A stretch of 64,000 nt of DNA from Haplodiscus bocki. Taxonomy: Eukaryota. The notes below the pieces were generated by a model. That model was not told where the DNA came from. It worked only from the letters and a program-made list of their open reading frames with translations, and did not search any database. Shown piece by piece: positions 25,001 to 56,300 of the stretch (the first letter of the stretch is position 1; the number at the start of each line of letters is the position of its first letter). The stretch is from assembly GCA_965655095.1 (NCBI GenBank), contig OZ296651.1, positions 3,658,001-3,722,000 on the forward strand. The letters run 5' to 3'. The translations under genes and the position numbers were made by a program.

Positions 25001-28000
25001 ATGTAAAATCGTTTGAACCAAACTTCAGCAGTGAATCGGTAGCCGACAGCAGAAAAACGTCAGAATGCCAGGGTAATCATTTTTTTCAATGAAACACGAA
25101 AAGCACTATCAAATCTGAAGATGCAAGAAAACTAAACAAAGTACTGCCTTTCAGACAGTTTCAGATATCAAGAACAACCAATCATCCCAAATTCTAGGAC
25201 ATATCTCGAAGATAAACGTCTCGAAACACCAGCAACCTCGCCAATAAAGATGCAAGCCATCGTGCAAGAATCAGATCTACACGCATATAAATATTCATAG
25301 CAGACACGGGAAACCTCATCAACCGAGAACCACTGTTACGGAGCCATGAAAAACCCCACTAAAAACGCAGCGCTGAGTGTCGAAAACTAGATTACTAAGA
25401 GGCCAAAAACAAGCGGTTACAAGTAAACTCCGTTGATGGAAAAACCAGCCGTATATGGGTAATAGACAGAAAAACGCAAACTTGATTACACAAAATTGAC
25501 AAATTGATTTTCTTAACAAATAAATTTTCATAATAAACATTTAAAGCCTCATCATGATAAATATGCTAGCAAATTGAAAAAAAGTACTACCTCTCAGACG
25601 ACTTCAGATATCAAGAACAACTAATTATCCAAATCAAACCAGATATCTGGAAAATGGCGTCTAGAAACACTACTAATCTTGACAATAAAGCTTCTTCCTA
25701 TCGTGAAAAAACTAGATATTCACGCTTTTAAAAATTCATACTAAACACGGGAGACCTCATTAACAGAGAATCATTGCCACGAATCCATGAAAAACAACAC
25801 AAAAAAGCAGCTCTAACTGAGCGTCGAAAACTAGGCTACCAAAAGGCCAAAAAAATGGTTCACATGTAAACTCCGTTGAAGGAAAAACCAGCCGTATATG
25901 GGTAACAGGCAGAAAAATGCAAACATGATGTTACTGATGTTAGAAAAAAAAGACATTAATTTTCGTAACAAAGAAAAATTTTCATAATAAACAAGGCATA
26001 ACCTGTCACGCATTTCAGATATCAAGAACAACTAAGTTTCCCGATCAATCCCAAAAAACTCAAAAAAAACGTCTAGAAACAACATCAATCTCAGTCTTCA
26101 AGATGCAATTAAACATGCTACTTCTAGATCTATATGCTAATCATTATTCATATGAAACACGGAAAACATCATTAACCGACAAAAACTTCGAGTGGTCACA
26201 AAATAAACAACTAAAATAAAGCAAAGACGTCTGAATGTTGAAAAAAGCAATTACAAGGGCAAAAACAAATGTATCCCACATGAAACTCTTTCGACGCAAA
26301 ATTAAGCAGTAGACCGGTAAGACAGAAAAATGCAAACCGTCAGAAGAAATGAGAGAATAACAATCAATTCAAACACGATAGCACCATCACATGTAAAGAT
26401 GCCACAAAAAAACAAGGTACTGCCTTTCAGAAACCATCAAATATCGAGTACAATCACTGATAGAATCGAATTCAGAAATCTGGAAAAGGACGTCTTACAA
26501 CACTAAACCAGAACACAAAAACTCATCCGATCATGAAGTGTTTGGATCTATACTTTCATCATTTTCAAATGCAACCCGGGAAACCTTGGCAACTGACAAT
26601 ATTAGCAGAGTGGTCACAAAATACAGCAGTAAAATTACTCAACGCCAGCTGAGTGTCGAAAAACAGTCGACCAAGAGGCCGAAAACAGGTGGACTACATG
26701 TAAAATCGTTTGAACCAAACTTCAGCAGTGAATCGGTAGTCGACAGCAGAAAAACGTCAGAATGTAATGGTAATCACATTTTATATAAAACACGAAAAGC
26801 ACCATCAAACGTAAAGATGCAAGAAAACTGAAAGTACTGCCTTTCAGACAGTTTCAGATGTCAAGACCAAACAATCATCCGAAATTCCAGCACATATCTA
26901 GAAGATGACGTCTAAAACACCACCAATCTCGACAAAAAAGATTCATCCCATCGTGAAAAAACCAGCTTTCACGCTTTTAAAAATTCATATTAAACACGGG
27001 AAACCTCATTAAACGAGAATCATTGCTACGAGCCATGAAAAACAACACAAAAGATGCAGCTGTCAACTGACTGTCGAAAGCTAGGCTACCAAGAGGCCAA
27101 AAACAAGTGGTAAACAAGTAAACTCCGTTGCAGGAAAAACCAGCCGTATATGGGTAACCGGCAGAAAAACGCAGGCATGATGTTACAAAAACAGACAATA
27201 TTTTCTCAACAATTAGATTTTCTCAATAAACAATCAAAGCCTCAACATAGTTGAATATGCTAGCAAATCAAACAAGGTATAACCTGTAAGACACTTCAGA
27301 TAACAGGAAAAACTAATTATCCAAATCAAACCAGCTATCTGGAAAAAAACGTCTAGAAACAACATCAATCTCAACCGTAAACATGCATTCCAACGCGATA
27401 ATTTCAGATCTATATGCCATTCATTATTCACAAGGAACACGGGAAACATCATTATCCGACACAAACTTCTGAGTTGTCACAAAATAAACCCCTAAGACAC
27501 GAAAACAAGGGCAAAAACAAATGTATTGCACATACAACTATTTCGAAGCAAAATTCAGCCGTAGCTCGGTAAGACAGAAAAAAGAAAATATTTCAGAAAA
27601 GAGTATCATTCTTATTAGACACACAAAACACCATCACATGTAAAAATGCTAAAAAAAAATATGGTACTGCCTTCCAGATACCGTCAAATATCGAAGACAA
27701 GCAAAGATAAAAACAAATTCAGAAATATGGAAAGTGACGTTTTACAACACTATACCTGGACAAAAAATGCATCCCATCATGAAGTGTTTGGATCTATACT
27801 TTCATCATTTTCAGATGCAACCCGGGAAACCTTGGCAACTGACAATATTAGCAGAGTGGTCACAAAATACAGCAGTAAAATTACTCAACGCCAGCTGAGT
27901 GTCGAAAAATAGTCGACCAAGAGGCTGAAAACAGGTGGACTACATGTAAAATCGTTTGAACCAAACTTCATCAGTGAATTGGTAGCCGACAGCAGAAAAA

Positions 28001-31000
28001 CGTCAGAATGTAATGGTAATCACATTTTATATAAAACACGAAAAGCACCATCAAACGTAAAGATGCAAGAAAACTGAAAGTACTGCCTTTCAGACAGTTT
28101 CAGATGTCAAGACCAAACAATCATCCGAAATTCCAGCACATATCTAGAAGATGACGTCTAAAAACAACACCAATCTCGACAAAAAAGATTCATCCCATCG
28201 TGAAAAAATCAGCGTTCACGCTTTCAAAAATTCATATTAAACACGGGAAACCTCATTAAACGAGAATCATTGCTACGAGCCATGAAAAACAACACAAAAA
28301 ATGCAGCTGTCAACTGACTGTCGAAAGCTAGGCTACCAAGAGGCCAAAAACAAGTGGTAAACAAGTAAACTCCGTTGCAGGAAAAACCAGCCGTATATGG
28401 GTAACCGGCAGAAAAACGCAGGCATGATGTTACAAAAACAGACAATAATTTTCTCAACAATTAGATTTTCTCAATAAACAATCAAAGCCTCAACATAGTT
28501 GAATATGCTAGCAAATCAAACAAGGTATAACCTGTAAGACACTTCAGATAACAGGAAAAACTAATTATCCAAATCAAACCAGCTATCTGGAAAAAAACGT
28601 CTAGAAACAACATCAATCTCAACCATAAACATGCATTCCAACGCGATAATTTCAGATCTATATGCCATTCATTATTCACAAGGAACACGGGAAACATCAT
28701 TATCCGACACAAACTTCTGAGTTGTCACAAAATAAACCCCTAAGACACGAAAACAAGGGCAAAAACAAATGTATTGCACATACAACTATTTCGAAGCAAA
28801 ATTCAGCCGTAGCTCGGTAAGACAGAAAAAAAGAAAATATTTCAGAAAAGAGTATCATTCTTATTAGACACACAAAACACCATCACATGTAAAAATGCTA
28901 AAAAAAATATGGTACTGCCTTCCAGATACCGTCAAATATCGAAGACAAGCAAAGATAAAAACAAATTCAGAAATATGGAAAGTGACGTTTTACTACACTA
29001 TACCTGGACAAAAAATGCATCCCATCATGAAGTGTTTGGATCTATACTTTCATCATTTTCAGATGCAACCCGGGAAACCTTGGCAACTGACAATATTAGC
29101 AGAGTGGTCACAAAAAACAGCAGCAAAATTACTCAACGCCAGCTGAGTGTCGAAAAACAGTCGACCAAGAGGCCGAAAACAGGTGGACTACATGTAAAAT
29201 CGTTTGAACCAAACTTCAGCAGTGAATCGGTAGCCGACAGCAGAAAAATGTCAGAATGCCAGGGTAATCATTTTTTTCAATGAAACACGAAAAACACTAT
29301 CAAATCTAAAGATGCAAGAAAACTAAAAGTACTGCGTTTCAGACAGTTTCAGATATCAAGAACAACCAATCATCCCAAATTCTAGGACATATCTCGAAGA
29401 TAAACGTCTCGAAACAGCAGCAACCTCGCCAATAAAGATGCAAGCCACCGTGCAAGAATCAGATCTACACGCATATAAATATTCATAACAGACACGGAAA
29501 ACCTCATCAACCGAGAACCACTGCTACGGAGCCATGAAAAACCCCACTAATAACGCAGCGCTGAGTGTCGAAAACTAGATTACTAAGAGGCCAAAAACAG
29601 GCGGTTACAAGTAAACTCCATTGATGGAAAAACCAGCCGTATATGGGTAACAGGCAGAAAAATTCAAACATGATAATACAAAAAATGACAACAATTTTCT
29701 TAACAAATAAATTTTGATACTACTCTAAAAAGGCTCATCATAGGTAAATATGCTAGACAATCAAACAATCTACTACTTCAGACACTCACAGATATCAAGA
29801 ACAACCAATGATCCAAATCAAACCAGATATCTGGAAAATGACGTCCAGAAACACAACTAATCTCGACAATAAACACTCATCCTACCGTGAAAAAAAAACA
29901 GATCTTCACGCTTTTAAAAACTCATATTAAACAGGGGAAACCTCATTAACCGAGAATCATTGCTACGGTGCCATTAAAAACAACACAAAAAATGCCGCTC
30001 TAACCAAGTGTCGAAAACTAGGCTACGAAAAGGCCAAAAACAAGTGGTTTACATGTAAACTCCGTGAAAGGAAAAACCAGCCGTATACGGGTAACAGACA
30101 GGAAATAGCCAACATGATATTACAAAAAAAAAAGACATTTCTTGACAAAAGAATTTTCATATTACACTCAAAGCCTCAACACAGTTAAATATGCTAGCAT
30201 TAAATATGCTAGCAAATCAAACAAGGTATAACCTGTCAGACACATCAGATAACAAGAACAACTAAAATCAGAACAATCCAAAAAAACTTTAAAAGAACGT
30301 CTGGAAACAACATCAATCTCAACCATAAACATACATTTCAACGCGCTAATCTCAGATCTATATTCCATTCAAAAATCATATGAAACACGGGAAACATCAT
30401 TAACCGACACAAACTTCTGAGTTGTCACAAAATAAACCCCCAAGACACGAAAACAACGGCAAAATCAAATGTATTGCACAAAAAACTATATCGAAGCAAA
30501 ATTCAGCCGTAGCTCGGTAAGACAGAAAAAAGCAAATACTTCAGAAAAGAGTATCATTCTTATTAGACACACAAAACACCATCACATGTAAATATGCTAA
30601 AAAAACATGGTACTGCCTTCCAGATACCGTCAAATATCGAAGACAACCAAAGATAAAAACAAATTCAGAAATATGGAAAATGACGTCTTACAACACTATA
30701 CCTGAACAAAAAATGCATCCCATCATGAAGTGTTTGGATCTCTACTTTCATCATTTTCCAATGAACCCGAAAAACCTTAGCAACCGACAACTTTCGGAGA
30801 GGGGTCACAAAAATAACCAGTAAAATTATGAAACGCCAGCTGAGTGTCGAAAAATAGTCAACGGAAAAGCCGAAAAGAGGTGGACTAAATGTAAAATCGT
30901 TTGAAGCAAACTTCAGTAGTGAATCGGTACCCGACAGCAGAAAATGTCAGAATGCCAGGGTAATCATTTTTTTCAATGAAACACGAAAAAAACTATCAAA

Positions 31001-31931
31001 TCTGAAGATGCAAGAAAACTAAACAAAGTACTGCCTTTCAGACAGTTTCAGATATCAAGAACAACCAATCATCCCAAATTCTAGGACATATCTCGAAGAT
31101 AAACGTCTCGAAACACCAGCAACCTCGCCAATAAAGATGCAAGCCATCGTGCAAGAATCAGATCTACACGCATACAAATATTCATAACAGACACAGGAAA
31201 CCTCATCAACCGAGAACCACTGCTACGGAGCCATGAAAAACCCCACTAAAAACGCAGCGCTGAGTGTCGAAAACTAGATTACTAAGAGGCCAAAAACAAG
31301 CGGTTACAAGTAAACTCCGTTGATGGAAAAACCAGCCGTATATGGGTAACAGGCAGAAAAATTCAAACATGATGATACAAAAAATGACACGACAAGTTTC
31401 TTAACAAATAAATTTTCATACTACTCTAAAAAGCCTCATCATAGGTAAATATGCTAGACAATCAAACAATCTACTACTTCAGACACTCACAGATATCAAG
31501 AACAACTAATGATCCAAATCAAACCAGATATCTGGAAAATGACGTCTAGAAACACAACTAATCTCGACAATAAACACTCATCCTACCGTAAAAAAAACAG
31601 ATCTTCACGCTTTTAAAAACTCATATTAAACAGGGGAAACCTCATTAACCGAGAATCATTGCTACGGGGCCATTAAAAACAACACAAAAAATGCCGCTCT
31701 AACCAAGTGTCGAAAACTACGCTACGAAAAGGCCAAAAACAAGTGGTTTACATGTAAACTCCGTGAAAGGAAAAACCAGCCGTATACGGGTAACAGACAG
31801 GAAAATGCAAACATGATATTACAAAAAAAAGACATTTCTTGACAAAAGAATTTTCATAATATTACGCTCAAAGCCTCAACACAGTTAAATATGCTAGCAT
31901 TAAATATGCTAGCAAATCAAACAAGGTATAA
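13021..31931. repeat. Satellite family B, left arm (monomers ~380-440 bp; 4-monomer ~1,697-bp HOR, 3-monomer ~1,248-bp unit, 4,638/6,335-bp superperiods)
   Basis: The motifs AAACACGGGAAACMTCATYAACCGA, GAGTGTCGAAAA, ACATGTAAA and TTCAGATATCAAGAAC recur about every 420 bp. ORF offsets are 16809/18506/20203 (1,697), 17288/21926 (4,638), 20203/26538 and 20642/26977 (6,335), and 27234/28482 (1,248). Confidence 0.95.
31928..31931 (+). repeat. Target-site duplication ATAA (left copy; right copy at 35630-35633)
   Basis: The empty site in sister monomers is ACAAGGT-ATAA-CCTGTCAG (e.g. ~30221-30239). Here the left flank ends ACAAGGT-ATAA and the right flank starts ATAA-CCTGTCAG. Confidence 0.7.
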
Positions 31932-32003
31932 ACAAATAAATAAATAAATAAACATTTTATTATTCTGGAAAAAATATCCAAAATACAAAGACACACTACA
32001 CCT
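31932..32003 (-). other. LINE 3' UTR: small stem-loop, AATAAA and (TTTA)n microsatellite tail
   Basis: The minus strand reads ...TTTTGGA TATTTTT TCCAGAA TAATAAAATG TTTATTTATTTATTTATTTGT. The stem (31983-31963) has one G:U pair. Short-repeat tails are typical of CR1/L2-group elements. Confidence 0.75.
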
Positions 32004-34619
32004 TTACAAAAAGTACACTCCCAAGCATCTGTTGGGGAAAATGCGGTGAGTACGACCTGCAATTGACGGCGGATGCCGATCTCTCAGGTGGGTACTTGCA
32101 TAATCAGTTCTTGATGGAATGAGGCTGTGAAGTGGGTGCTGGGGGTACTTGAGGCACTTGTTGAGCAGACGCTGATCTCTGTCAATGGAAACTGAATGGA
32201 TATCCTTGAATTCGTCGATAATTCCAAGGTGAACACATCTCCTTTGCAAAGAGTCAATGCGATTCAATTCTGTGTTAGATACTGATGCATATGCTTCAAT
32301 CCCATATATCAGTGTGGATAGAATGAACGCATTGTACAGTCTAGATAACTCAAGCTTATTGTAACCAAGGCGCTTAAGCTTCAGAAGAAGATATACATTA
32401 CGTCTGGCTTTGGATATCAAGTAATTAATATGGTTGCTCAGGGACATTGTGTTCGACACCATTATACCAACGATGTTCATTTCGGTAACTCTGGTAACAT
32501 CGGGAAACGCTGAAGGCAAAATAGTGTTTCTTGAAAGTTTGATCACTAATTCTTTCGATTTCGAACAGTTGAGGACGAATCCGTTGTTGTAGCACCAGTT
32601 TTTCACAAAGTCTAGCACTTTTTCAGCATCGTCGTCACCATTTTTGCCAGCACAGCAAGGATAGTTATCATCCGCAAATTTAACTAAGCTGTTTCGTAGA
32701 GTAAGCTCCGAAGGAAGCATAAATGATAGAGTAGATATATTGAAATATTTGGGGCCCCCAACAGTCCCTTGAGGAACGCCTTGATTAATACTAAGCCACT
32801 GCGAAGGTTTGCCGTTGCTAACAACTTTCTGTTGTCGGTCGCGCAAGAAGCTTGCAATCCAGCAAACAATGTTCGGATCCGCTCCAATATTGTTAAGGGA
32901 ACTCACAATTAATTGATGGCTAACTCTGTCAAAGGCTTTAGATAAATCTAATGAAATAATTCTGACGTAATCATAATTGTTTTCTTTATAGCATTGGATA
33001 ATATTCTGCACCTTAACAACCATTGTAGATGTTGAACCGTGTTGACGAAACCCAAACTGACTGCTGTCTAGCTTCCAATGATATAAATCGGATATAAAGA
33101 ATCTATCGACAAGTCTTTCAAAGATTCGGGCTACAACAGGAGTTATTGACATTGGACGTAAGCTATCTATCCGCGGAGGTGTCGTCTTCGGAAGAGGTGT
33201 AACAATAGCACGCTTCCAAATCGCAGGAAAAATTCCTTGCCTCAAACTTTCGTTAAAGATAACATGGACAACAGGAGTGAGTATATGAGCAAATTCTCGG
33301 AATACATACCAAGGTATGTTGTCACTACCACAAGCGGTACGACTGACTGACGACAATCCATAGTAAACTTGGTGTAATGATAAGCTCGGTGTATCTTTCA
33401 ATTTCAGTGCAGGAGTTTCTGGTAGTTTGTAATTAGAAGTGGTGCAAATATCTGCGAACATTTGGTTTATTGAGTTAACATCAAACTCGAGAGGAATAGT
33501 TGTTGGCCTTTGTTTACCAATGTAATTCTTGGTTTTATTCCACCATAACTTTGTGCCAATTTTCTGTTCGTTATGCTTTGTGTTGTCTATAATTAAGTTG
33601 CCGATTCGTTTGCTGAGTAACTCAACTTCATGCCATCGCTGATGCCGAACAAGACGTTGCTTCCGCTTCAAGAGTGTCTTTATAAGTGGTGTCATGTAAG
33701 TAGGGTCGCGAGATTTGATCGTTACTTGCTTCTCAGGGCAGGCAGTATTAAGTGCACTTTGGAGAATTTCTGTAAGTTGTTCTGTAGCCGCATTGATATC
33801 ACTGTTTGCTAATTGCGCGACGCTTTGGAAGTCAGTAGTACACAGCATGCTGTGCAGCAATTGCATATTTCTGGCTCTACAGTCCCGCAAAAGTTTCACC
33901 TGCCTTGTACTGGGTAATCTTTCACGGGGCGAACATACAATTCCGAAGTGATCAGTTTTGAATGTCATCTTTGTGAGGAGTATGTCGTCATAATAATATG
34001 GATGAGACGTAAACACGTAATCCAATACACTCCGTTCTCTAGTATTTCTGGTGTTAAGGGAACATAGCGACGTACTTCCGAGTAACTTAGATACTGGGAA
34101 TGTATTGAAATCGCCAGCAACCACCACAATTCTATGATCCGTATTATCAAGAAATGTATCGCACGTAGATGTGATGTGTTCAAGTAAGTCGGCTTGTTTA
34201 GTAGTTGACATGTCAGGCGGTACATAAATACAACATAGCAATAAGGGACGTTTGGCGTATACCTGAAGCCATAGATTTTCGAAGACTTCCGACTGTTCCG
34301 GATATTTCTGAATACATCTGACGTTTTTGTGAGTGTATATACAAACTCCTCCACCAGAAGATTTTTGAGAATTTAATGCAGTGCGGTCTGAGCGGTAACA
34401 GTCGAAGCCTGGGATACAAGAGAACCCATCTATAATCTCACTAGTAAACCAGGTTTCAGTAACAAAGCAAATATCTATGTCCAACGATGATAATTCAGCA
34501 GCTAAAAGCGACAATGCAATGTCTTTTTTCAGCGATCTACCATTGGTGAGCAGTAATTTAGGAACAGAGATATAAGTTGGTGCAACTGTTGGAGTTGATG
34601 TCGATGTGGGCTGAGATAG
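32004..34619 (-). CDS. LINE ORF2: apurinic-like endonuclease (APE/EEP) + reverse transcriptase, ~871 aa open frame (the track's 836-aa call starts at an internal TTG, 34514)
   Basis: APE motifs: LLTNGRSL (upstream of the called start), FVTETW, YRSDR, GGGVCIY, IYVPP, AGDFN, VLDYVF, TDH. RT motifs: GSDNIP, WKRAIVTPLPK, RPMSIT, QFGFR, LDLSKAFDRV, GVPQG, FADD, LNCSKS. The C-terminus contains HPLH. The frame is uninterrupted. Confidence 0.96.
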   Translation of the reverse strand, partial: LSQPTSTSTPTVAPTYISVPKLLLTNGRSLKKDIALSLLAAELSSLDIDICFVTETWFTSEIIDGFSCIPGFDCYRSDRTALNSQKSSGGGVCIYTHKNVRCIQKYPEQSEVFENLWLQVYAKRPLLLCCIYVPPDMSTTKQADLLEHITSTCDTFLDNTDHRIVVVAGDFNTFPVSKLLGSTSLCSLNTRNTRERSVLDYVFTSHPYYYDDILLTKMTFKTDHFGIVCSPRERLPSTRQVKLLRDCRARNMQLLHSMLCTTDFQSVAQLANSDINAATEQLTEILQSALNTACPEKQVTIKSRDPTYMTPLIKTLLKRKQRLVRHQRWHEVELLSKRIGNLIIDNTKHNEQKIGTKLWWNKTKNYIGKQRPTTIPLEFDVNSINQMFADICTTSNYKLPETPALKLKDTPSLSLHQVYYGLSSVSRTACGSDNIPWYVFREFAHILTPVVHVIFNESLRQGIFPAIWKRAIVTPLPKTTPPRIDSLRPMSITPVVARIFERLVDRFFISDLYHWKLDSSQFGFRQHGSTSTMVVKVQNIIQCYKENNYDYVRIISLDLSKAFDRVSHQLIVSSLNNIGADPNIVCWIASFLRDRQQKVVSNGKPSQWLSINQGVPQGTVGGPKYFNISTLSFMLPSELTLRNSLVKFADDNYPCCAGKNGDDDAEKVLDFVKNWCYNNGFVLNCSKSKELVIKLSRNTILPSAFPDVTRVTEMNIVGIMVSNTMSLSNHINYLISKARRNVYLLLKLKRLGYNKLELSRLYNAFILSTLIYGIEAYASVSNTELNRIDSLQRRCVHLGIIDEFKDIHSVSIDRDQRLLNKCLKYPQHPLHSLIPSRTDYASTHLRDRHPPSIAGRTHRIFPNRCLGVYFL

Positions 34620-34622
34620 TCA
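34617..34622 (-). promoter_or_regulatory. Candidate stop-codon readthrough signal TGA-CTA between ORF1 and ORF2
   Basis: Plus-strand TAGTCA reads TGACTA on the minus strand. It is the only stop between the ORF1 C-terminal frame and ORF2 (34622-34514 = 108, in frame). UGA-CUA is an established leaky-stop context. Confidence 0.7.
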
Positions 34623-34823
34623 CGATAGATCTACTTCCGATGTAACATCTTTGCCGTCAACATACAATCTCAAGCTTCTAACCTTTATGCGTCGTGAGTC
34701 AGTACCGCTGTTTATCAATTCCCGCCGATGACGTAGCAGTGTGTTTTCAATTTTTATTTGGGAAGGTGAAAGGCCTCGCGAAAGAAACACACGGTCCTTA
34801 AAGTCTTTCAGTAGGTAGGCTTT
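34620..34823 (-). pseudogene. Frameshifted C-terminal part of ORF1 (67 codons, +1 frame), ending at TGA 34622-34620
   Basis: Manual translation gives KAYLLKDFKDRVFLSRGLSPSQIKIENTLLRHRRELINSGTDSRRIKVRSLRLYVDGKDVTSEVDLS*. This resembles the LINE ORF1 C-terminal domain pattern (VFI..DL[ST].....L...R......G......L.V.G). It is in the same frame as ORF2. Confidence 0.82.
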
Positions 34824-35529
34824 AGACTTTTCTCATCTCCCACTCATTCTGGCATGTCACTAAGATCGTACGAGGACGGTCTATACCTTTTTCTTTCTTC
34901 ATTTGACCAAGTCGCTTGATGTTGGTGAAGCTCGTTGAAGTTCCCAAAAATTCGAAAATTTCCTTAACTGAGTTCTCTTCGGCCGACATGATTTCTTCAG
35001 ATCTTCTGTTTGTTGATTCCTTTACACCATCAATGCGAATTTGGCGTGGGTAATCCTCATTGTTGCTTCGTAGATCCGTTTGAGGCGGGGTGTGTGAATG
35101 GGCAATTCGTGGTTGTTGCTGTAAACTAGTCGAAATTTCCAATATTGAAGATTTAATTTCTTTGAGAGAATTCTCAAGTTGCTGGGGTAGCCCGTCATTC
35201 GATACGACTTCGGCCTGTTGCATCTTCTTTTGTTGAGAAAGTGATTCCGTGAGAAGAGCTTTAAGCGCTTTGGGATTCTTAGTTAGTACTTGCAACTGTT
35301 CTTCAACTCGTTCCTCGCTGAGAGCGAGAAGCTCAGCTATAGTTGGTATATTTCCAAGTACCTTGATTTTGGAGAACGGTACCTTGGTATCGAAGCGATC
35401 AGGCCATCCTTGATAGTGCACCAGTGCCTCGTTGTTAGATGCAAAAGTCTCTAATATCTTTGCTGGATAGTAGCGGTTGTCTTGAAGATCGATGGCGCTA
35501 ACCAACTGGCCCGATTTCCAGTCTGTCAT
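34822..35529 (-). CDS. LINE ORF1 (N-terminal 235 aa): Tudor-knot/chromo-barrel-like domain, coiled coil, RRM-like region; cut short by a frameshift
   Basis: ATG in GCTGCCATGA context. Residues 4-56 read W..GQLVSAID....YYPAKIL...LVHYQGWPDRFD..V...I. Heptad-like segments follow (LENSLKEIKSSILEISTSL), then the L1/CR1 ORF1-type motifs IRIDGVKE, KRLG and RPRTILV. Confidence 0.88.
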   Translation of the reverse strand: MTDWKSGQLVSAIDLQDNRYYPAKILETFASNNEALVHYQGWPDRFDTKVPFSKIKVLGNIPTIAELLALSEERVEEQLQVLTKNPKALKALLTESLSQQKKMQQAEVVSNDGLPQQLENSLKEIKSSILEISTSLQQQPRIAHSHTPPQTDLRSNNEDYPRQIRIDGVKESTNRRSEEIMSAEENSVKEIFEFLGTSTSFTNIKRLGQMKKEKGIDRPRTILVTCQNEWEMRKV

Positions 35530-36299
35530 GGCAGCAGATTATCACCGGGGTTGTTCACTCGGTACCCCACCGGGCCATGCTCTGAAACTATTTAATAAGT
35601 TTATCACAACAATTAGGCTGTCACAACAAATAACCTGTCAGACACATCAGATAACAAGAACAACTAAAATCAGAACAATCCAAAAAAACTTTAAAAGAAC
35701 GTCTGGAAAGGACATCAATCTCAACCATAAACATGCATTTCAACGCGCTAATCTCAGATCTATATTCCATTCAAAAATCATATGAAACACGGGAAACATC
35801 ATTAACCGACACAAACTTCTGAGTTGTCACAAAATAAACCCCTAAGACACGAAAACAACGGCAAAATCAAATGTATTGCACATAAAACTATTTCGAAGCA
35901 AAATTCAGCCGTAGCTCGGTAAGACAGAAAAAAGCAAATATTTCAGAAAAGTATCATTCTTATTAGACACACAAAACACCATCACATGTAAATATGCTAA
36001 AAAACATGGTACTGCCTTCTAGATACCGTCAAATATCGAAGACAACCAGAGATAAAAACAAATTCAGAAATATGGAAAATGACGTCTTACAACACTATAC
36101 CTGAACAAAAAATGCATCCCATCACGAAGTGTTTGGATCTCTACTTTCATCATTTTCCAATGAACCCGAAAAACCTTAGCAATCCACAACTTTCGCAGAG
36201 GGGTCACAAAAATCACCAGTAAAATTATGAAACGCCAGCTGAGTGTCGAAAAATAGTCAACCGAAAAGCCGAAAAGAGGTGGACTAAATGTAAAATCGT

Positions 36300-39200
36300 T
36301 TGAAGCAAACTTCAGTAGTGAATCGGTACCCGACAGCAGAAAATGTCAGAATGCCAGGGTAATCATTTTTTTCAATGAAACACGAAAAACACTATCAAAT
36401 CTAAAGATGCAAGAAAACTAAAAGTACTGCGTTTCAGACAGTTTCAGATATCAAGAACAACCAATCATCCCAAAGTCTAGGACATATCTCGAAGATAAAC
36501 GTCTCGAAACACCAGCAACCTCGCCTATAAAGATGCAAGCCATCGTGCAAGAATCAGATCTACACGCATATAAATATTCATAACAGACACGGGAAACCTC
36601 ATCAACCGAGAACCACTGCTACGGAGCCATGAAAAACCCCACTAAAAACGCAGCGCTGAGTGTGGAAAACTAGATTACTAAGAGGCCAAAAACAAGCGGT
36701 TACAAGTAAACTCCGTTGATGGAAAAACCAGCCGTATATGGGTAACAGCCAGAAAAATTCAAACATGATAATACAAAAAAAAGACAAAATAATTTTCTTA
36801 ACAAATAAATTTTCATACTACTCTAAAAAGCCTCATCATAGGTAAAAATGATAGACAATCAAACAATCTACTACTTCAGACACTCACAGATATCAAGAAC
36901 AACCAATGATCCAAACCAAACCAGATATCTGGAAAATGACGTCCAGAAACACAACTAATCTCGACAATAAACACTCATCCTACCGTGAAAAAAAAACAGA
37001 TCTTCACGCTTTTAAAAACTCATATTAAACAGGGGAAACCTCATTAACCGAGAATCATTGCTACGGGGCCATTAAAAACAACACAAAAATTGCCGCTCTA
37101 ACCAAGTGTCGAAAACTAGGCTACGAAAAGGCCAAAAACAAGTGGTTTACATGTAAACTCCGTGAAAGGAAAAACCAGCCGTATACGGATAACAGACAGG
37201 AAAATGCAAACATGATATTACAAAAAAAGACATTTCTTGACAAAGGAATTTTCATAATATTACACTCAAAGCCTCAACACAGTTAAATATGCTAGCATTA
37301 AATATGCTAGCGAATCAAACAAGGTATAACCTGTCAGACACATCAGATAACAAGAACAACTAAAATCAGAACAATCCAAAAAAAACTTAAAGAACGTCTG
37401 GAAACAACATCAATCTCAACCAAAAACATGCATTTCAACGCGCTAATCTCAAATCTATATTCCATTCAAAAATCATATGAAACACGGGAAACATCATTAA
37501 CCGACACAAACTTCTGAGTTGTCACAAAATAAACCCCTAAGACACGAAAACAACGGCAAAATCAAATGTATTGCACATAAAACTATTTCGAAGCAAAATT
37601 CAGCCGTAGCTCGGTAAGACAGAAAAAAGCAAATATTTCAGAAAAGAGTATCATTCTTATTAGACACACAAAACACCATCACATGTAAATATGCTAAAAA
37701 ACATGGTACTGCCTTCCAGATACCGTCAAATATCGAAGACAACCAAAGATAAAAACAAATTCAGAAATATGGAAAATGACGTCTTACAACACTATACCTG
37801 AACAAAAAATGCATCCCATCATGAAGTGTTTGGAACTCTACTTTCATCATTTTCCAATGAATCCGAAAAACGTTAGCAACCGACAACTTTCGCAGAGGTG
37901 TCGCAAAAATCACCAGTAAAATTATGAAACGCCAGCTGAGTGTCGAAAAATAGTCAACCGAAAAGCCGAAAAGAGGTGGACTAAATGTAAAATCGTTTGA
38001 AGCAAACTTCAGTAGTGAATCGGTACCCGACAGCAGAAAATGTCAGAATGCCAGGGTAATCATTTTTTTCAATGAAACACGAAAAACACTATCAAATCTA
38101 AAGATGCAAGAAAACTAAAAGTACTGCGTTTCAGACAGTTTCAGATATCAAGAACAACCAATCATCCCAAATTCTAGGACATATCTCGAAGATAAACGTC
38201 TCGAAACACCAGCAACCTCGCCAATAAAGATGCAAGCCATCGTGCAAGAATCAGATCTACACGCATATAAATATTCATAACAGACACGGGAAACCTCATC
38301 AACCGAGAACCACAGCTACGGAGCCATGAAAAACCCCACTAAAAACGCAGCGCTGAGTGTCGAAAACTAGATTACTAAGAGGCCAAAAACAAGCGGTTAC
38401 AAGAAAACTCCGTTGATGTAAAAACAAGCCGTATATGGGCAAGAGGCAGAAAAACGCAAACTGGATTATACAAAATTGACAAATTGATTTTCTTAACAAA
38501 TAAATTTTCATATTAAACATTTAAAGCCTCATCATGATAAATACGCTAGCAAATTAAAAAAAGTACTACCTCTCAGACGACTTCAGATATCAAGAACAAC
38601 TAATTATCCAAATCAAACCAGATATCTGGAAAATGACGTCTAGAAACACTACTAATCTTGACAATAAAGCTTCTTCCTATCGTGAAAAAACTAGATATTC
38701 ACGCTTTTAAAAATTCATACTAAACACGGGAAACCTCATTAACAGAGAATCATTGCCACGGATCCATGAAAAACAACACAAAAAAGCAGCTCTAACTGAG
38801 CGTCGAAAACTAGGCTACCAAAAGGCCAAAAAAATGGTTCACATGAAAACTCCGTTGAAGGAAAAACCAGCCGTATATGGGTAACAGGCAGAAAAATGCA
38901 AACATGATGTTACGGATGTTAGAAAAAAAAGACATTGATTTTCGTAACAAAGAAAAAATTTTAAGGTAAACAAGGCATAACCTGTCACGCATTTCAGATA
39001 TCAAGAACAACTAAGTTTCCAGAACAATCCAAAAAAACTCAAAAAAAAACGTCTAGAAACAACATCAATCTCAGTCTTCAAGATGCAATTCAACATGCTA
39101 CTTCCAGATCTATATGCAAATCATTATTCATATGAAACACGAAAAACATCATTAACCGACAAAAACTTCGAGTGGTCAAAAAATAAACAACTAAAACAAA

Positions 39201-42200
39201 GCAAAGACGTCTGAATGTTGAAAAAAGCAATTACAAGGGCAAAAACAAATGTATTCCACAAGAAACTCTTTCGAAGCAAAATTAAGCAGTAGACCGGTAA
39301 GACAGAAAAATGCAAACCGTCAGAAGAAATGAGAGAATAACAATCAATTCAAACACGAGAGCACCATCACATGAAAAGATGCCACAAAAAAACAAGGTAC
39401 TGCCTTTCAGATACCGTCAAATATCGAGTAAAATCATTGGTAGAAACGAATTCAGAAATCTGGAAAAGGACGTCTTACAACACTAAGCCTGAACACAAAA
39501 ATTCATCCGATCATGAAGTGTTTGGATCTATACTTTCATCATTTTCAAATGCAACCCGGGAAACCTTGGCAACCGACAATATTAGCAGAGTGGTCACAAA
39601 ATACAGCAGTAAAATTACTCGACGCCAGCTGAGTGTCGAAAACTAGTCGACCAAGAGGCCAAAAACAGGTGGACTACATGTAAAATCGTTTGAAGCAAAC
39701 TTCAGTGGTGAATCGGTACCCGACAGCAGAAAATGTCAGAATGCCAGGGTAATCATTTTTTTCAATGAAACACGAAAAACACTATCAAATCTGAAGATGC
39801 AAGAAAACTAAAAGTACTGCGTTTCAGACAGTTTCAGATATCAAGAACAACCAATCATCCCAAAGTCTAGGACATATCTCGAAGATAAACGTCTCGAAAC
39901 ACCAGCAACCTCGCCTATAAAGATGCAAGCCATCGTGCAAGAATCAGATCTACACGCATATAAATATTCATAACAGACACGGGAAACCTCATCAACCGAG
40001 AACCACTGCTACGGAGCCATGAAAAACCCCACTAAAAACGCAGCGCTGAGTGTGGAAAACTAGATTACTAAGAGGCCAAAAACAAGCGGTTACAAGTAAA
40101 CTCCGTTGATGGAAAAACCAGCCGTATATGGGTAACAGCCAGAAAAATTCAAACATGATAATACAAAAAAAAGACAAAATAATTTTCTTAACAAATAAAT
40201 TTTCATACTACTCTAAAAAGCCTCATCATAGGTAAAAATGCTAGACAATCAAACAATCTACTACTTCAGACACTCACAGATATCAAGAACAACCAATGAT
40301 CCAAATCAAACCAGATATCTGGAAAATGACGTCCAGAAACACAACTAATCTCGACAATAAACACTCATCCTACCGTGAAAAAAAAACAGATCTTCACGCT
40401 TTTAAAAACTCATATTAAACAGGGGAAACCTCATTAACCGAGAATCATTGCTACGGGGCCATTAAAAACAACACAAAAATTGCCGCTCTAACCAAGTGTC
40501 GAAAACTAGGCTACGAAAAGGCCAAAAACAAGTGGTTTACATGTAAACTCCGTGAAAGGAAAAACCAGCCGTATACGGATAATAGACAGGAAAATGCAAA
40601 CATGATATTACAAAAAAAAGACATTTCTTGACAAAGGAATTTTCATAATATTACACTCAAAGCCTCAACACAGTTAAATATGCTAGCATTAAATATGCTA
40701 GCGAATCAAACAAGGTATAACCTGTCAGACACATCAGATAACAAGAACAACTAAAATCAGAACAATCCAAAAAAAACTTAAAGAACGTCTGGAAACGACA
40801 TCAATCTCAACCATAAACATGCATTTCAACGCGCTAATCTCAAATCTATATTCCATTCAAAAATCATATGAAACACGGGAAACATCATTAACCGACACAA
40901 ACTTCTGAGTTGTCACAAAATAAACCCCTAAGACACGAAAACAACGGCAAAATCAAATGTATTGCACATAAAACTATTTCGAAGCAAAATTCAGCCGTAG
41001 CTCGGTAAGACAGAAAAAAGCAAATATTTCAGAAAAGAGTATCATTCTTATTAGACACACAAAACACAATCACATGTAAATATGCTAAAAAACATGGTAC
41101 TGCCTTCCAGATACCGTCAAATATCGAAGACAACCAAAGATAAAAACAAATTCAGAAATATGGAAAATGACGTCTTACAACACTATACCTGAACAAAAAA
41201 TGCATCCCATCATGAAGTGTTTGGAACTCTACTTTCATCATTTTCCAATGAATCCGAAAAACGTTAGCAACCGACAACTTTCGCAGAGGTGTCGCAAAAA
41301 TCACCAGTAAAATTATGAAACGCCAGCTGAGTGTCGAAAAATAGTCAACCGAAAAGCCGAAAAGAGGTGGACTAAATGTAAAATCGTTTGAAGCAAACTT
41401 CAGTAGTGAATCGGTACCCGACAGCAGAAAATGTCAGAATGCCAGGGTAATCATTTTTTTCAATGAAACACGAAAAACACTATCAAATCTAAAGATGCAA
41501 GAAAACTAAAAGTACTGCGTTTCAGACAGTTTCAGATATCAAGAACAACCAATCATCCCAAATTCTAGGACATATCTCGAAGATAAACGTCTCGAAACAC
41601 CAGCAACCTCGCCAATAAAGATGCAAGCCATCGTGCAAGAATCAGATCTACACGCATATAAATATTCATAACAGACACGGGAAACCTCATCAACCGAGAA
41701 CCACAGCTACGGAGCCATGAAAAACCCCACTAAAAACGCAGCGCTGAGTGTCGAAAACTAGATTACTAAGAGGCCAAAAACAAGCGGTTACAAGAAAACT
41801 CCGTTGATGTAAAAACAAGCCGTATATGGGCAAGAGGCAGAAAAACGCAAACTGGATTACACAAAATTGACAAATTGATTTTCTTAACAAATAAATTTTC
41901 ATATTAAACATTTAAAGCCTCATCATGATAAATACGCTAGCAAATTAAAAAAAGTACTACCTCTCAGACGACTTCAGATATCAAGAACAACTAATTATCC
42001 AAATCAAACCAGATATCTGGAAAATGACGTCTAGAAACACTACTAATCTTGACAATAAAGCTTCTTCCTATCGTGAAAAAACTAGATATTCACGCTTTTA
42101 AAAATTCATACTAAACACGGGAAACCTCATTAACAGAGAATCATTGCCACGGATCCATGAAAAACAACACAAAAAAGCAGCTCTAACTGAGCGTCGAAAA

Positions 42201-43080
42201 CTAGGCTACCAAAAGGCCAAAAAAATGGTTCACATGAAAACTCCGTTGAAGGAAAAACCAGCCGTATATGGGTAACAGGCAGAAAAATGCAAACATGATG
42301 TTACGGATGTTAGAAAAAAAAGACATTAATTTTCGTAACAAAGAAAAAATTTTAAGGTAAACAAGGCATAACCTGTCACGCATTTCAGATATCAAGAACA
42401 ACTAAGTTTCCAGAACAATCCAAAAAAACTCAAAAAAAAACGTCTAGAAACAACATCAATCTCAGTCTTCAAGATGCAATTCAACATGCTACTTCCAGAT
42501 CTATATGCAAATCATTATTCATATGAAACACGAAAAACATCATTAACCGACAAAAACTTCGAGTGGTCAAAAAGTAAACCACTAAAACAAAGCAAAGACG
42601 TCTGAATGTTGAAAAAAGCAATTACAAGGGCAAAAACAAATGTATTCCACAAGAAACTCTTTCGAAGCAAAATTAAGCAGTAGACCGGTAAGACAGAAAA
42701 ATGCAAACCGTCAGAAGAAATGAGAGAATAACAATCAATTCAAACACGAGAGCACCATCACATGAAAAGATGTTACAAAAAAACAAGGTACTGCCTTTCA
42801 GATACCGTCAAATATCGAGTAAAATCATTGGTAGAAACGAATTCAGAAATCTGGAAAAGGACGTCTTACAACACTAAGCCTGAACACAAAAATTCATCCG
42901 ATCATGAAGTGTTTGGATCTATACTTTCATCATTTTCAAATGCAACCCGGGAAACCTTGGCAACCGACAATATTAGCAGAGTGGTCACAAAATACAGCAG
43001 TAAAATTACTCGACGCCAGCTGAGTGTCGAAAACTAGTCGACCAAGAGGCCAAAAACAGGTGGACTACATGTAAAATCGT
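36300..43080. repeat. ~3,391-bp 8-monomer HOR, two copies
   Basis: ORF offsets 36602/39992, 38299/41690, 38810/42201, 39124/42515 and 39371/42762 (3,390-3,391 bp). Boundaries are approximate. Confidence 0.85.
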
Positions 43081-43099
43081 TTGAAACAAACTTCAGCAG

Positions 43100-55000: not shown

Positions 55001-56300
55001 TCCCAGGAGAATCCAAAAAAAATGAAAAAAAAAAACGTCTGGAAACAACATCAATCTCAGTCTTCAAGATGCAATTCAACATGCTACTTTCAGATCTATA
55101 TGCTAATCATTATTCATATGAAACACGGAAAACATCATTAACCGACAAAAACTTCGAGTGGTCACAAAAAAAACCACTAAAATAAAGCAAAGACGTCTGA
55201 ATGTTGAAAAAAGCAATTACAAGGGCAAGAACAAATGTATTCCACATGTAACTCTTTCGAAGCAAGATTAAGCAGTAGACCGGTAAGACAGAAAAATGCA
55301 AACCGTCAGAAGAAATGAGAGAATAACAATCAATTGAAACACGATAGCACCATCACATGTAAAGATGCCACAAAAAAACAAGGTACTGCCTTTCAGATAC
55401 CTTCAAATATCGAGTACAATCATTGATAGAAACGAATTCAGAAATCTGGAAAAGGACGTCTTACAACACTAAACCTGAACACAAAAAATCATCCGATCAT
55501 GAAGTGTTTGGATCTATACTTTCATCATTTTCAAATGCAACCCGGGAAACCTTGGCAACTGACAATATTAGCAGAGTGGTCACAAAATACAGCAGTAAAA
55601 TTACTCAACGCCAGCTGAGTGTCGAAAAATAGTCGACCAAGAGGCCGAAAACAGGTGGACTACATGTAAAATCGTTTGAACCAAACTTCAGCAGTGAATC
55701 GGTAGCCGACAGAAGAAAAACGTCAGAATGTAATGGTAATCATATTTTATATAAAACACGAAAAGCACCATCAAACGTAAAGATGCAAGGAAAACTGAAA
55801 GTACTGCCTTTCAGACAGTTTCAGATGTCAAGAACAAACAATCATCCGAAATTCCAGCACATATCTAGAAGATGACGTCTAGAAACACCACCAATCTCGA
55901 CAAAAAAAAAAGATTCATCCCATCGTGAAAAAACCAGATTTCACGCTTTTAAAAATTCATATTAAACACGGGAAACCTCATTAAAACGAGAATCATTGCT
56001 ACGAGCCATGAAAAACAACACAAAAAATGCAGCTGTCAACTGACTGTCGAAAGCTAGGCTACCAAGAGGCCAAAAACAAGTGGTAAACATGTAAACTCCG
56101 TTGAAGGAAAAACCATCCGTATATGGGTAACCGGCAGAAAAACGCAGTCATGATGTTACAAAAACAGACAATAATTTTCTCAACAATTAGATTTTCTCAA
56201 TAAACAATCAAAGCCTCAACATAGTTGAATATGCTATCAAATCAAACAAGGGACAATCTGTCAGACAATTCAGATAGGAAGAACAACTAAGTTCCCAGGA
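43100..56300. repeat. Domain of ~1,383-bp 3-monomer units and ~2,148-bp units nested in a ~7,162-bp superperiod
   Basis: Offsets 43362/44743/46125, 44201/45583/46968 and 51362/52745/54130 (~1,383); 47947/50095 and 48260/50408 (2,148); 44201/51362, 46968/54130 and 47947/55110 (7,161-7,163). Confidence 0.85.

What the first reader, a model, noticed from the sequence alone, without database searches (positions are those of the whole stretch)
35362..35529. LINE ORF1 begins with a Tudor-knot/chromo-barrel-like chromatin-reader domain, in an element sitting inside satellite DNA
Seen: ORF1 residues 4-56 (WKSGQLVSAIDLQDNRYYPAKILETFASNNEALVHYQGWPDRFDTKVPFSKIK) show the Y.AKIL...HY.GW...[WYF]D..V pattern. 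Established: this pattern characterises the Royal-family chromo-barrel/Tudor-knot domains of Eaf3/MRG15, MSL3, MOF/Esa1 and PHF20, several of which read methyl-lysine through an aromatic cage. The equivalent positions here (Y21, Y39, W42, F46) are all aromatic. The accessory domains usually described at LINE ORF1 N-termini are PHD, zinc finger or esterase, and chromodomain-guided targeting is best known from Ty3/gypsy chromovirus integrases. I do not recall this domain as a described LINE ORF1 module, but I cannot check novelty. Inference: a captured histone-mark reader could steer the LINE RNP to heterochromatic or centromeric satellite. RNA binding, reported for some chromo-barrels, is the alternative.
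Basis: partly seen in the sequence, partly recalled or inferred. Interest (0 to 1): 0.92.

Follow-up and report, generated by a model that had tools for sequence, protein, structure and literature searches.

The report
Coral LINE whose ORF1 carries Tudor
A young, low-copy jumping gene (LINE) in a coral genome starts its first protein with a Tudor-type domain, the kind that reads methyl marks on histones, where its relatives carry a PHD or zinc finger. This is a new variant of a known theme, and the data neither show nor exclude that the domain steers the element into satellite DNA.

Summary
ORF1 (window 34822-35529, minus strand) begins with a roughly 55-residue Royal-family Tudor domain.

- **Sequence evidence:** Pfam hits are below threshold. 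A search of 1.84 billion proteins gives 65 significant hits; the ten best were scanned and all are Tudor/MBT/chromo-barrel proteins.
- **Fold evidence:** an alignment-based AlphaFold model (pLDDT 84) matches PHF20L1, TDRD3, PHF1 and MRG15 Tudor and chromo-barrel structures (TM 0.74, Z about 10).
- **Binding pocket:** aligned to PHF20L1 Tudor1, the methyl-lysine pocket is nearly complete (D14, Y21, Y39, W42, F46; L15 replaces the first Tyr).
- **The element:** a 3,698-bp LINE with a 4-bp target-site duplication, inserted into a 1.4-1.7-kb satellite. This copy's ORF1 is frameshifted.
- **The family:** about 22 copies, 14 full-length, 0.6-2.8% ORF1 divergence, 13 with intact ORF1.
- **The module is exchangeable:** related LINEs carry a PHD finger, a Cys-rich finger or nothing at the same position. 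No Tudor was found in 132 related ORF1/ORF2 proteins or in the searched literature.
- **Satellite steering is unproven:** 4 of 14 copies lie in or beside four different tandem arrays, but the genome background is unknown.

The scan noted the same ORF1 type on another piece of this genome (s1-381291). Verdict: a new variant of a known kind.

The parts
31932..35629 (-). Whole LINE copy, 3,698 bp
   Evidence: blastn against 13 other copies sets the common ends. The exact ends come from comparison with uninterrupted satellite monomers.
35630..35633 (.). Target-site duplication (ATAA on the + strand) at the element's 5' side
   Evidence: Empty sites at 40717-40720 and 37326-37329 carry the 4 bp once.
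31928..31931 (.). Target-site duplication at the element's 3' side
35530..35629 (-). Short 5' UTR (about 100 nt) with a 7-codon upstream ORF
   Evidence: Most copies start within 16 bp of this point; four start 60 bp further in. Sequence read.
35356..35520 (-). Tudor (Royal-family) domain, ORF1 residues 4-58. Pocket positions: D14, L15, Y21, Y39, W42, F46
   Evidence: Pocket mapping from the HMMER alignment to PHF20L1 Tudor1 and that protein's published cage.
35119..35340 (-). Predicted long helices (coiled-coil region), ORF1 residues about 64-137
   Evidence: Single-sequence AlphaFold secondary structure at low confidence. Aligns with the ORF1 of related LINEs.
34825..35052 (-). Conserved ORF1 core (alpha/beta, RRM-like by topology), residues about 160-235
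   Evidence: The region shared with other LINE ORF1 families in this genome and elsewhere. No Pfam family matches.
34822..35529 (-). ORF1 as it stands in this copy: 235 codons, cut short by a 5-nt deletion at codons 235-236
   Evidence: The other 13 full-length copies have 303-304 codons.
34620..34821 (-). Out-of-frame remainder of ORF1 and its original TGA stop (34620-34622), followed by CTA
32004..34619 (-). ORF2 frame (871 codons plus stop), with no ATG before the endonuclease. In intact copies it is in the same frame as ORF1, behind a single TGA
34002..34508 (-). Apurinic-type endonuclease domain
   Evidence: Pfam Exo_endo_phos, E 1.5e-5, 25.3 bits against a cut-off of 24.5.
32544..33191 (-). 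Reverse transcriptase domain
   Evidence: Pfam RVT_1, E 3e-24.
31932..32003 (-). 3' UTR with AATAAA (31956-31961) and a short (TTTA)n tail. Other copies end in (TTA)n or (TTTG)n
1..31931 (.). Host satellite, period about 1.4-1.7 kb with higher-order structure (left of the insertion)
35630..64000 (.). Host satellite (right of the insertion)

Best explanation
This is one damaged copy of a young, low-copy APE-type LINE of the CR1/L2-like group, in what appears to be a coral genome. Its ORF1 protein has a domain-swapped N-terminus. Sister families carry a PHD finger, a small Cys-rich finger or nothing ahead of the coiled coil; this family carries a single Tudor domain of the PHF20L1-Tudor1/MBT/chromo-barrel kind. 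Shown here: the fold, the homology, the position of the module, its restriction to this family, and the real insertion with a target-site duplication. Inferred: the pocket looks able to hold a mono- or di-methylated lysine. It keeps the Asp and four of the five aromatic residues of PHF20L1 Tudor1, and the fifth is Leu, a change that in PHF20L1 keeps ligand binding and opens the cage. The most likely role is therefore the one proposed for the PHD module in related LINEs: tethering the ORF1p-RNA particle to methyl-marked chromatin or a methylated protein at the integration step. ORF2 has no ATG and follows ORF1 in frame after TGA-CTA. If the stop is read through, some molecules would join Tudor, ORF1, endonuclease and reverse transcriptase in one chain, so a tether would act directly on the integration machinery. 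The mark is unknown, and the data do not show a preference for satellite.
For: Domain identity. Pocket residues: the alignment read against the PHF20L1 cage (Y24, Y29, F47, W50, Y54 and D23) and the Y24L mutant data. The best PDB sequence hit is that Y24L mutant. Module position and exchange: in-genome ORF1 relatives match only residues about 60-235. The L021/L025 family has a PHD finger at the same place (Pfam E 5.5e-6, above threshold). L059 from another sample has a PHD (E 5e-5) and L058 a Cys-rich N-terminus. Restriction to this family: exactly 14 genomic matches to the domain, all in this family. A Tudor profile finds nothing at E<=1 in 12 ORF1 and 120 ORF2 homologues. None of the 65 Tudor relatives has ORF1-core or RT similarity. 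A working element family: 13 of 14 ORF1 copies are intact. Two of six fully sampled copies keep both frames open. ORF1 divergence is 0.6-2.8%. Variants shared by two or more copies are 8 synonymous to 4 non-synonymous, p 0.003-0.009 against neutrality. In-frame TGA-CTA junction in 13 copies.
Against: There is no binding, expression or integration-site experiment. No RNA run holding the element was found. Pfam scores are below the gathering thresholds. The fold equally resembles methyl-arginine readers (TDRD3, SMN, SPF30) and nucleic-acid-binding relatives. Recent work finds that the PHF20L1 Tudors bind nucleosomal DNA and lose methyl selectivity there. Selection on the Tudor codons alone cannot be shown: 7 synonymous against 16 non-synonymous variants, nearly all singletons. 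With about 22 copies, insertion-site statistics are weak. The RT clade was not placed on a reference tree.
Confidence: 0.5

Rival explanations
1. The Tudor domain is a protein adaptor for methyl-arginine or another protein ligand, for example dimethyl-arginine tails of PIWI or Sm proteins. It would place the LINE particle in a cytoplasmic or nuclear granule, or interfere with silencing, rather than read chromatin.
For: The top structural matches by Z-score are the methyl-arginine readers TDRD3, SPF30 and SMN (Z 10.5-9.3). SMN Tudor is also among the weak sequence hits.
Against: The HY-x-G-W...F-D signature and the best sequence hits are of the PHF20L1/MBT/chromo-barrel type. From my memory of the SMN sequence (a lead, not a test), the first cage Trp of SMN aligns with Asp14 here, and SMN's Asn is Asp.
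Confidence: 0.15
2. The domain is an extra nucleic-acid-binding module that helps ORF1p grip RNA or target DNA. It would have no mark specificity.
For: The Pfam Tudor-knot family is named for RNA binding. PHF20L1 tandem Tudors bind nucleosomal DNA with high affinity. A PWWP domain bound to ssDNA is among the fold matches. ORF1 proteins are RNA chaperones.
Against: The pocket residues used for methyl-lysine are kept, which would not be needed for backbone binding. Sister families place a PHD finger, not an RNA-binding module, at this position.
Confidence: 0.15
3. One reading: the reader domain steers integration specifically into heterochromatic or centromeric satellite.
For: Four of 14 full-length copies lie in or within 20 bp of long tandem arrays: this window, a 291-bp satellite, 587/750-bp arrays and 115-121-bp arrays. 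These are four unrelated repeat families. If satellite makes up 10% or less of the genome, this is a mild excess (binomial p about 0.04 at 10%, my calculation).
Against: Ten of 14 copies show no tandem array in the 6-8 kb examined on one side. None shares this window's satellite. Satellites are noted often in this genome (129 of 2,264 scan notes matched the words satellite or centromere), so the background may be high. Young transposon copies survive better in gene-poor repeats without any targeting.
Confidence: 0.12
4. The domain is a recently acquired passenger with no role in the element's life cycle.
For: The family is very young and small. Purifying selection on the Tudor codons alone is not demonstrable.
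Against: The domain provides the ORF1 start codon and is intact in 12 of 14 copies, one having lost the start codon and one carrying W42K. ORF1 as a whole shows an excess of synonymous shared variants. The closest outside Tudor sequences are only 30-40% identical, so the capture predates the present burst. All pocket residues are retained.
Confidence: 0.08

Closest known systems
PHD-finger ORF1 of CR1/L2-lineage LINEs (Metcalfe & Casane 2014, PMC4120745; first noted by Kapitonov & Jurka 2003, from memory)
   Same: A small histone-reader-type module sits at the N-terminus of ORF1, ahead of the coiled-coil/RRM core. It is variably present among related families and is interpreted as domain shuffling, with a proposed but untested role in targeting chromatin. 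Sister families of this element carry exactly that PHD module.
   Different: The module here is a beta-barrel Tudor, not a zinc-binding PHD finger. Tudor is not among the ORF1 domains listed in that survey of 448 elements (RRM, CCHC, CTD, esterase, PHD, coiled coil).
Transposon captures of chromatin-reader domains (Grau-Bove et al., bioRxiv 10.1101/2021.11.30.470311)
   Same: That survey found 823 gene models joining transposon and chromatin domains. They include several retrotransposon classes with PHD or Chromo readers in cnidarians, and tethering or evasion was proposed.
   Different: The text names Chromo, PHD, SNF2_N and SET fusions. Tudor is mentioned only for host gene families, not for transposon fusions. 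The supplementary tables were not checked.
Chromoviruses (Ty3/gypsy integrase chromodomain, e.g. MAGGY)
   Same: A Royal-superfamily reader is carried by a retroelement, with shown targeting of H3K9me chromatin (cited).
   Different: The element class is different (LTR), as are the protein (integrase C-terminus) and the Royal subfamily (classical chromodomain). No targeting is shown here.
PHF20L1 / PHF20 Tudor1
   Same: It is the best sequence and Foldseek match, with the same HY/F-x-x-W...Y/F-D motif. The pocket Asp and four of five aromatic positions are conserved. A Nematostella protein with an N-terminal Tudor, one cluster member of which is named C2H2-type, is among the significant hits.
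   Different: Identity is only 22-28%. The domain is single here, not a tandem pair with PHD and AT-hook. The first cage Tyr is Leu. Glu56 and Trp57 of PHF20L1 are Thr48 and Lys49 here.
ORF1-dependent targeting in site-specific LINEs (Dictyostelium TRE5-A ORF1p with TFIIIB; silkworm SART1 ORF1p), from memory
   Same: There is precedent that ORF1p, not only the endonuclease, can direct where a LINE lands.
   Different: Those act through protein partners or the packaging of specific RNAs, not through a histone-reader fold.

Membership tests
Royal superfamily, Tudor-type barrel (Pfam Tudor clan) | Significant sequence similarity to known members | tested here: met
   65 hits at E<=1e-3 in 1.84 billion proteins. 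The ten best all carry Tudor/MBT/Tudor-knot/MSL3-chromo domains above Pfam thresholds. All 31 weak PDB hits are Royal domains.
Royal superfamily, Tudor-type barrel (Pfam Tudor clan) | Score above a Pfam family's gathering threshold | tested here: not met
   Best is MSL3_chromo-like at 20.2 bits (cut-off 28), then Tudor-knot at 17.3 bits (cut-off 20.8).
Royal superfamily, Tudor-type barrel (Pfam Tudor clan) | Five-strand SH3-like beta-barrel of about 55 residues | tested here: met
   AlphaFold with alignment A1: pLDDT 83.8, strands at 9-14, 19-29, 34-39, 48-51 and 55-57. Foldseek TM 0.72-0.78, rmsd 1.1-1.8 A. VIA-align Z up to 10.5. Caveat: the alignment used for the model consists of Tudor relatives.
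Royal superfamily, Tudor-type barrel (Pfam Tudor clan) | Aromatic cage (3-5 aromatic residues) at the barrel mouth | tested here: met
   By alignment to PHF20L1 Tudor1: Y21, Y39, W42 and F46 are aromatic, D14 matches D23, and L15 replaces Y24. The cage geometry in the model was not inspected because no coordinates are on hand.
Royal superfamily, Tudor-type barrel (Pfam Tudor clan) | Binding of a methylated lysine or arginine | not testable with these tools
   Needs peptide arrays, ITC or NMR.
Tudor-knot / chromo-barrel subfamily (Eaf3/MRG15, MSL3, MOF/Esa1) | Closest relatives by sequence and structure are chromo-barrels | tested here: inconclusive
   The best Pfam rows are these two families, both sub-threshold. 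The best PDB sequence and Foldseek matches are PHF20L1/PHF20 Tudor1, TDRD3 and SMN. MSL3 and MRG15 follow at rank 23 and beyond with rmsd 2.2-2.7 A.
APE-type non-LTR retrotransposon (LINE) | ORF2 with apurinic-like endonuclease followed by reverse transcriptase | tested here: met
   Exo_endo_phos 25.3 bits (cut-off 24.5); RVT_1 86.3 bits.
APE-type non-LTR retrotransposon (LINE) | Dispersed copies with a common 3' end, 5' truncations, target-site duplication and a simple-repeat or A-rich tail | tested here: met
   22 copies share the 3' end, 14 are full-length and several are 5'-truncated. This copy has a 4-bp TSD. Tails are (TTTA)n, (TTA)n or (TTTG)n. TSDs of six other copies were not evident by eye.
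CR1/L2 lineages of the Jockey superfamily | Placement of the RT on a reference tree (for example RTclass1) | not tested
   No reference set is on hand. The assignment rests on relatives with PHD-type ORF1, which the literature reports for the CR1 and L2 lineages, and on microsatellite-like tails.
Chromatin-targeted retroelements (chromovirus-like tethering) | Insertion bias towards a defined chromatin state | tested here: inconclusive
   4 of 14 copies are in or beside tandem arrays. There is no background estimate and there are no chromatin maps.

The most novel reading that the evidence does not exclude
The Tudor is a working methyl-lysine reader. It tethers the LINE particle, and through UGA readthrough a Tudor-ORF1-endonuclease-RT fusion, to a particular chromatin mark enriched on tandem repeats. 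That would make this the first LINE shown to use a Royal-family reader to choose where it lands, a natural parallel to chromovirus integrases that arose by swapping out a PHD finger.
Probability: 0.2. Interest if true: 0.8.

Novelty: new variant of a known kind. Interest (0 to 1): 0.55.

Why it matters
The 2014 survey says it found no functional study of the PHD domain in LINEs. This coral genome holds sister families with a Tudor, a PHD, a small zinc finger or no module on the same ORF1 scaffold. The Tudor family is young, with intact copies. That makes a natural swap series for asking whether ORF1 modules bias LINE integration towards particular chromatin. The Tudor pocket is close enough to a well-studied human reader to make specific, mutable predictions. 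It also adds the Tudor fold to the list of chromatin domains captured by transposons in cnidarians.

Tried and rejected
- **Single-sequence AlphaFold of the whole ORF1** was too poor to use for fold search (pLDDT 49).
- **Word-based homologue search with ORF1** found only the family itself.
- **Donor search:** the domain alone finds only the 14 family copies at E<=1 in this genome, so no donor gene was identified. The closest outside Tudors, from molluscs and Nematostella, are 28-40% identical.
- **ORF1 core:** no Pfam family. The protein-atlas look-alikes are unnamed arthropod clusters at 0.87, a lead only.
- **Satellite targeting** could not be properly tested. A control with another LINE family through the look-up of encoding contigs gave one locus from a different sample. 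The 3.5-kb loci of other LINE families lie mostly inside those elements and are not a fair control (0.6% tandem).
- **Target-site duplications** of six other copies were not evident by eye, and their flanks share no motif, so sequence-specific insertion is unlikely.
- **Selection on the Tudor codons alone** is not significant: 7 synonymous against 16 non-synonymous variants. pN/pS is 0.1-0.2 against two copies from a second assembly, but on 3-5 synonymous and 2 non-synonymous differences, and one of those copies looks like the same locus as a genome copy.
- **Expression:** no holder of the element is on record as RNA.
- **Complex prediction** was not used, because no protein partner is claimed.
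- **Literature:** five searches found no LINE ORF1 with a Tudor or chromo-barrel domain (one search was for PHF20L1). This library does not hold Repbase or Dfam.
Full report
**What is at the coordinates.** Window 35362-35529 is the start of a 235-codon ORF on the minus strand (34822-35529) whose product begins MTDWKSGQLVSAIDLQDNRYYPAKIL. The next ORF downstream on that strand has an apurinic-type endonuclease and a reverse transcriptase (RVT_1, E 3e-24). The ORF is therefore the ORF1 of a LINE.

**Is the N-terminus a Royal-family domain?**

Pfam alone leaves the question open. On residues 1-60, MSL3_chromo-like scores E 6e-4 and Tudor-knot E 4.6e-3, both under their curated cut-offs. Tudor_3, MBT and SMN_Tudor follow behind. 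Four further lines settle it.

- **Solved structures by sequence.** Against the sequences of solved structures, all 31 hits up to E 10 are Tudor, MBT or chromo-barrel domains. PHF20L1 Tudor1 comes first.
- **Large protein library.** phmmer of residues 1-62 against 1.84 billion representative proteins gives 65 hits at E<=1e-3, most with two to thirteen matched stretches each. The ten best carry repeated Tudor, MBT, Tudor-knot and MSL3-chromo domains above Pfam thresholds.
- **Predicted fold.** An alignment of 61 matched stretches has the consensus G..V.A.D....WYPA.I...HY.GW....DEW. With it, AlphaFold gives a five-strand barrel at mean pLDDT 83.8. The single-sequence model reached only 49.
- **Fold comparison.** Foldseek matches the model to PHF20L1 Tudor1 (TM 0.74, rmsd 1.4 A over 58 residues), TDRD3, SMN and PHF20, then MSL3 and MRG15. 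VIA-align gives Z 10.5 to 9 for TDRD3, SPF30, PHF1, PHF19, MRG15 and SGF29.

The language-model look-alikes point the same way but are below the level that counts. The domain is best called a single Tudor of the PHF20L1/MBT/chromo-barrel group. It is not specifically a Tudor-knot.

**The pocket.** Published structures put the methyl-lysine of DNMT1 K142me1 and of H3K36me1 in a PHF20L1 Tudor1 cage. The cage is made of Y24, Y29, F47, W50 and Y54, with D23 hydrogen-bonding the ammonium. In the HMMER alignment these positions fall as follows:

| PHF20L1 Tudor1 | This ORF1 |
|---|---|
| D23 | D14 |
| Y24 | L15 |
| Y29 | Y21 |
| F47 | Y39 |
| W50 | W42 |
| Y54 | F46 |
| E56 | T48 |

The one non-aromatic position is the change made in the Y24L mutant. 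That mutant keeps ligand affinity and shifts the cage to its open form, and it is the top PDB sequence hit. An Asp in the cage is the feature tied to lower methylation states. This is inference from alignment, because I could not inspect model coordinates.

**The element and its family.**

- **Boundaries.** blastn against other copies bounds the element. Comparison with uninterrupted satellite monomers fixes it at 31932-35629 (3,698 bp). A 4-bp duplication (ATAA) flanks it, and empty sites lie at 40717-40720 and 37326-37329.
- **Satellite context.** The whole window is a satellite with a 1.4-1.7-kb period. This copy is therefore a true retrotransposition into an existing array.
- **Copy number.** The assembly (1.5 Gb) holds exactly 14 matches to the domain, all 95-100% identical and all in this family. 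It holds 22 matches to the element's 3' end. Most copies are therefore full-length.
- **Age and integrity.** ORF1 copies differ by 0.6-2.8%. Thirteen of 14 have an ORF1 of 303-304 codons. The window copy has a 5-nt deletion at codons 235-236 and stops early.
- **ORF1-ORF2 junction.** In the 13 intact copies ORF1 ends in TGA followed by CTA. ORF2 continues in the same frame without an ATG ahead of the endonuclease. Another first-stage note on this window (s1-366657) raised this as possible readthrough.
- **Open frames.** Of six copies sampled end to end, two keep both frames open for their full length.
- **Tails.** The 3' tails vary between (TTTA)n, (TTA)n and (TTTG)n.
- **Host.** The element occurs in runs labelled coral or coral-reef metagenome. 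The nearest named ORF2 relative is from the octocoral Paramuricea clavata. The host is probably a coral.

**The Tudor is an exchangeable module.** Other LINE ORF1 families in this genome match only residues about 60-235.

| Relative | N-terminal module ahead of the coiled coil |
|---|---|
| L016 (in genome, 33-34% identical in the full-ORF1 alignments) | none |
| L021/L025/L028 (in genome) | PHD finger (Pfam 26.8 bits, cut-off 24) |
| L058 (ORF2 37% identical, other sample) | Cys-rich N-terminus |
| L059 (ORF2 30% identical, other sample) | PHD (E 5e-5) |

A profile search with eight ORF1 sequences found 11 further proteins outside this family. Several of them begin with CxxC...CxxC motifs and none has a Tudor. 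A Tudor profile built from alignment A1 finds nothing at E<=1 among 12 ORF1 and 120 ORF2 homologues. None of the 65 Tudor relatives resembles the ORF1 core or the RT. This is the modular pattern described for CR1/L2 ORF1, with a fold not on that paper's list.

**Selection.** Among the 14 copies, variants seen in only one copy are 31 synonymous to 55 non-synonymous, roughly neutral decay. Variants shared by two or more copies are 8 to 4, an excess of synonymous change (p 0.003-0.009). ORF1 has thus been under constraint along the active lineage. For the 60 Tudor codons alone the counts are too small (7 to 16). One copy carries W42K and one has lost the start codon.

**Satellite targeting.** None of the other 13 full-length copies lies in this window's satellite. 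A fuller tandem-repeat scan of the one long flank available per copy shows three of them within 0-20 bp of long arrays:

- a 291-bp satellite;
- 587/750-bp arrays, confirmed on a second assembly;
- 115-121-bp arrays.

One further copy has a small 123-bp repeat 205 bp away. Nine show nothing. Counting the window, four of 14 copies are in four unrelated satellites. That would be a mild excess if arrays make up 10% of the genome or less. Satellites are noted often in this genome. Better survival of insertions in repeats would give the same picture. Flanks share no sequence motif.

**Mechanism.** The fold, the pocket residues, the module's position, its restriction to this family and a recently active family are shown. 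The rest is inferred. The module most likely does what the PHD module is proposed to do in related LINEs: tether the ORF1p-RNA particle to methyl-marked chromatin or a methylated protein at integration. If the TGA is read through, it would do so as part of the ORF2 chain itself. Rivals that the data cannot exclude are methyl-arginine or protein binding (the fold matches TDRD3, SMN and SPF30 equally well), plain nucleic-acid binding (PHF20L1 Tudors bind nucleosomal DNA), and a passenger domain.

**Novelty.** PHD modules in LINE ORF1 and captures of Chromo and PHD readers by transposons, cnidarian ones in particular, are published. I found no paper describing a Tudor or chromo-barrel in a LINE ORF1. 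Repbase, Dfam and the supplementary tables of the capture survey were not searched. The scan itself noted the same ORF1 type on another piece of this genome (s1-381291), most likely another copy of this family. I rate it a new variant of a known kind. It is of moderate interest, mainly as a natural module-swap series for testing what ORF1 reader modules do.

Noticed in passing
window 34620-34622 and the same junction in loci L002-L014: In 13 of 14 copies ORF1 ends in TGA followed by CTA. ORF2 continues in the same frame with no ATG before the endonuclease, so ORF2 must be made by readthrough, reinitiation or a non-AUG start. The window copy has lost the shared frame through its 5-nt deletion.
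   Followed up: partly
window 35530-35629 (minus strand): The 5' UTR is only about 100 nt and contains a 7-codon upstream ORF. Four copies start about 60 bp further in, leaving a UTR of about 30 nt.
   Followed up: no
L047:3725-8349 (copy at C4:56.86 Mb): This copy carries a 4-fold tandem duplication of an 891-899-bp internal piece of ORF2. The reading frame stays open across it (1,095 codons).
   Followed up: no
3' ends of copies in L046, L048, L052, L053, L055 and window 31932-31952: The 3' tail differs between copies: (TTTA)n, (TTA)n or (TTTG)n after the same AATAAA-containing end. This suggests that template-independent or slippage synthesis makes the tail.
   Followed up: partly
window 1-64000: The host satellite changes its repeat structure along the window. 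Periods are about 1.7 kb with 95% identical alternate units at 16-27 kb, about 1.38 kb at 43.7-54.7 kb, and a 441-bp sub-repeat at 57.2-62.4 kb. It carries a repeated 91-codon ORF (for example 39371-39646 and 42762-43037), probably without meaning.
   Followed up: no
L064 (ENA ERZ26859043, contig ctg85801): A copy in a second assembly has three residue differences in the Tudor region, including a lost start codon. I could not match this pattern to any of the 14 domain copies in the window's assembly. It sits next to an LTR retrotransposon (rve, RVT_1) and may be a polymorphic insertion.
   Followed up: partly
L058:130-1020 (Logan ERR12075130): The ORF1 of a related LINE starts with a Cys/His-rich stretch (C-x4-C-x2-C ... 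C-x-C-C ... H-x3-H-C ... C-x2-C) that no Pfam model recognises. It may be a divergent PHD or another zinc module at the same position.
   Followed up: no
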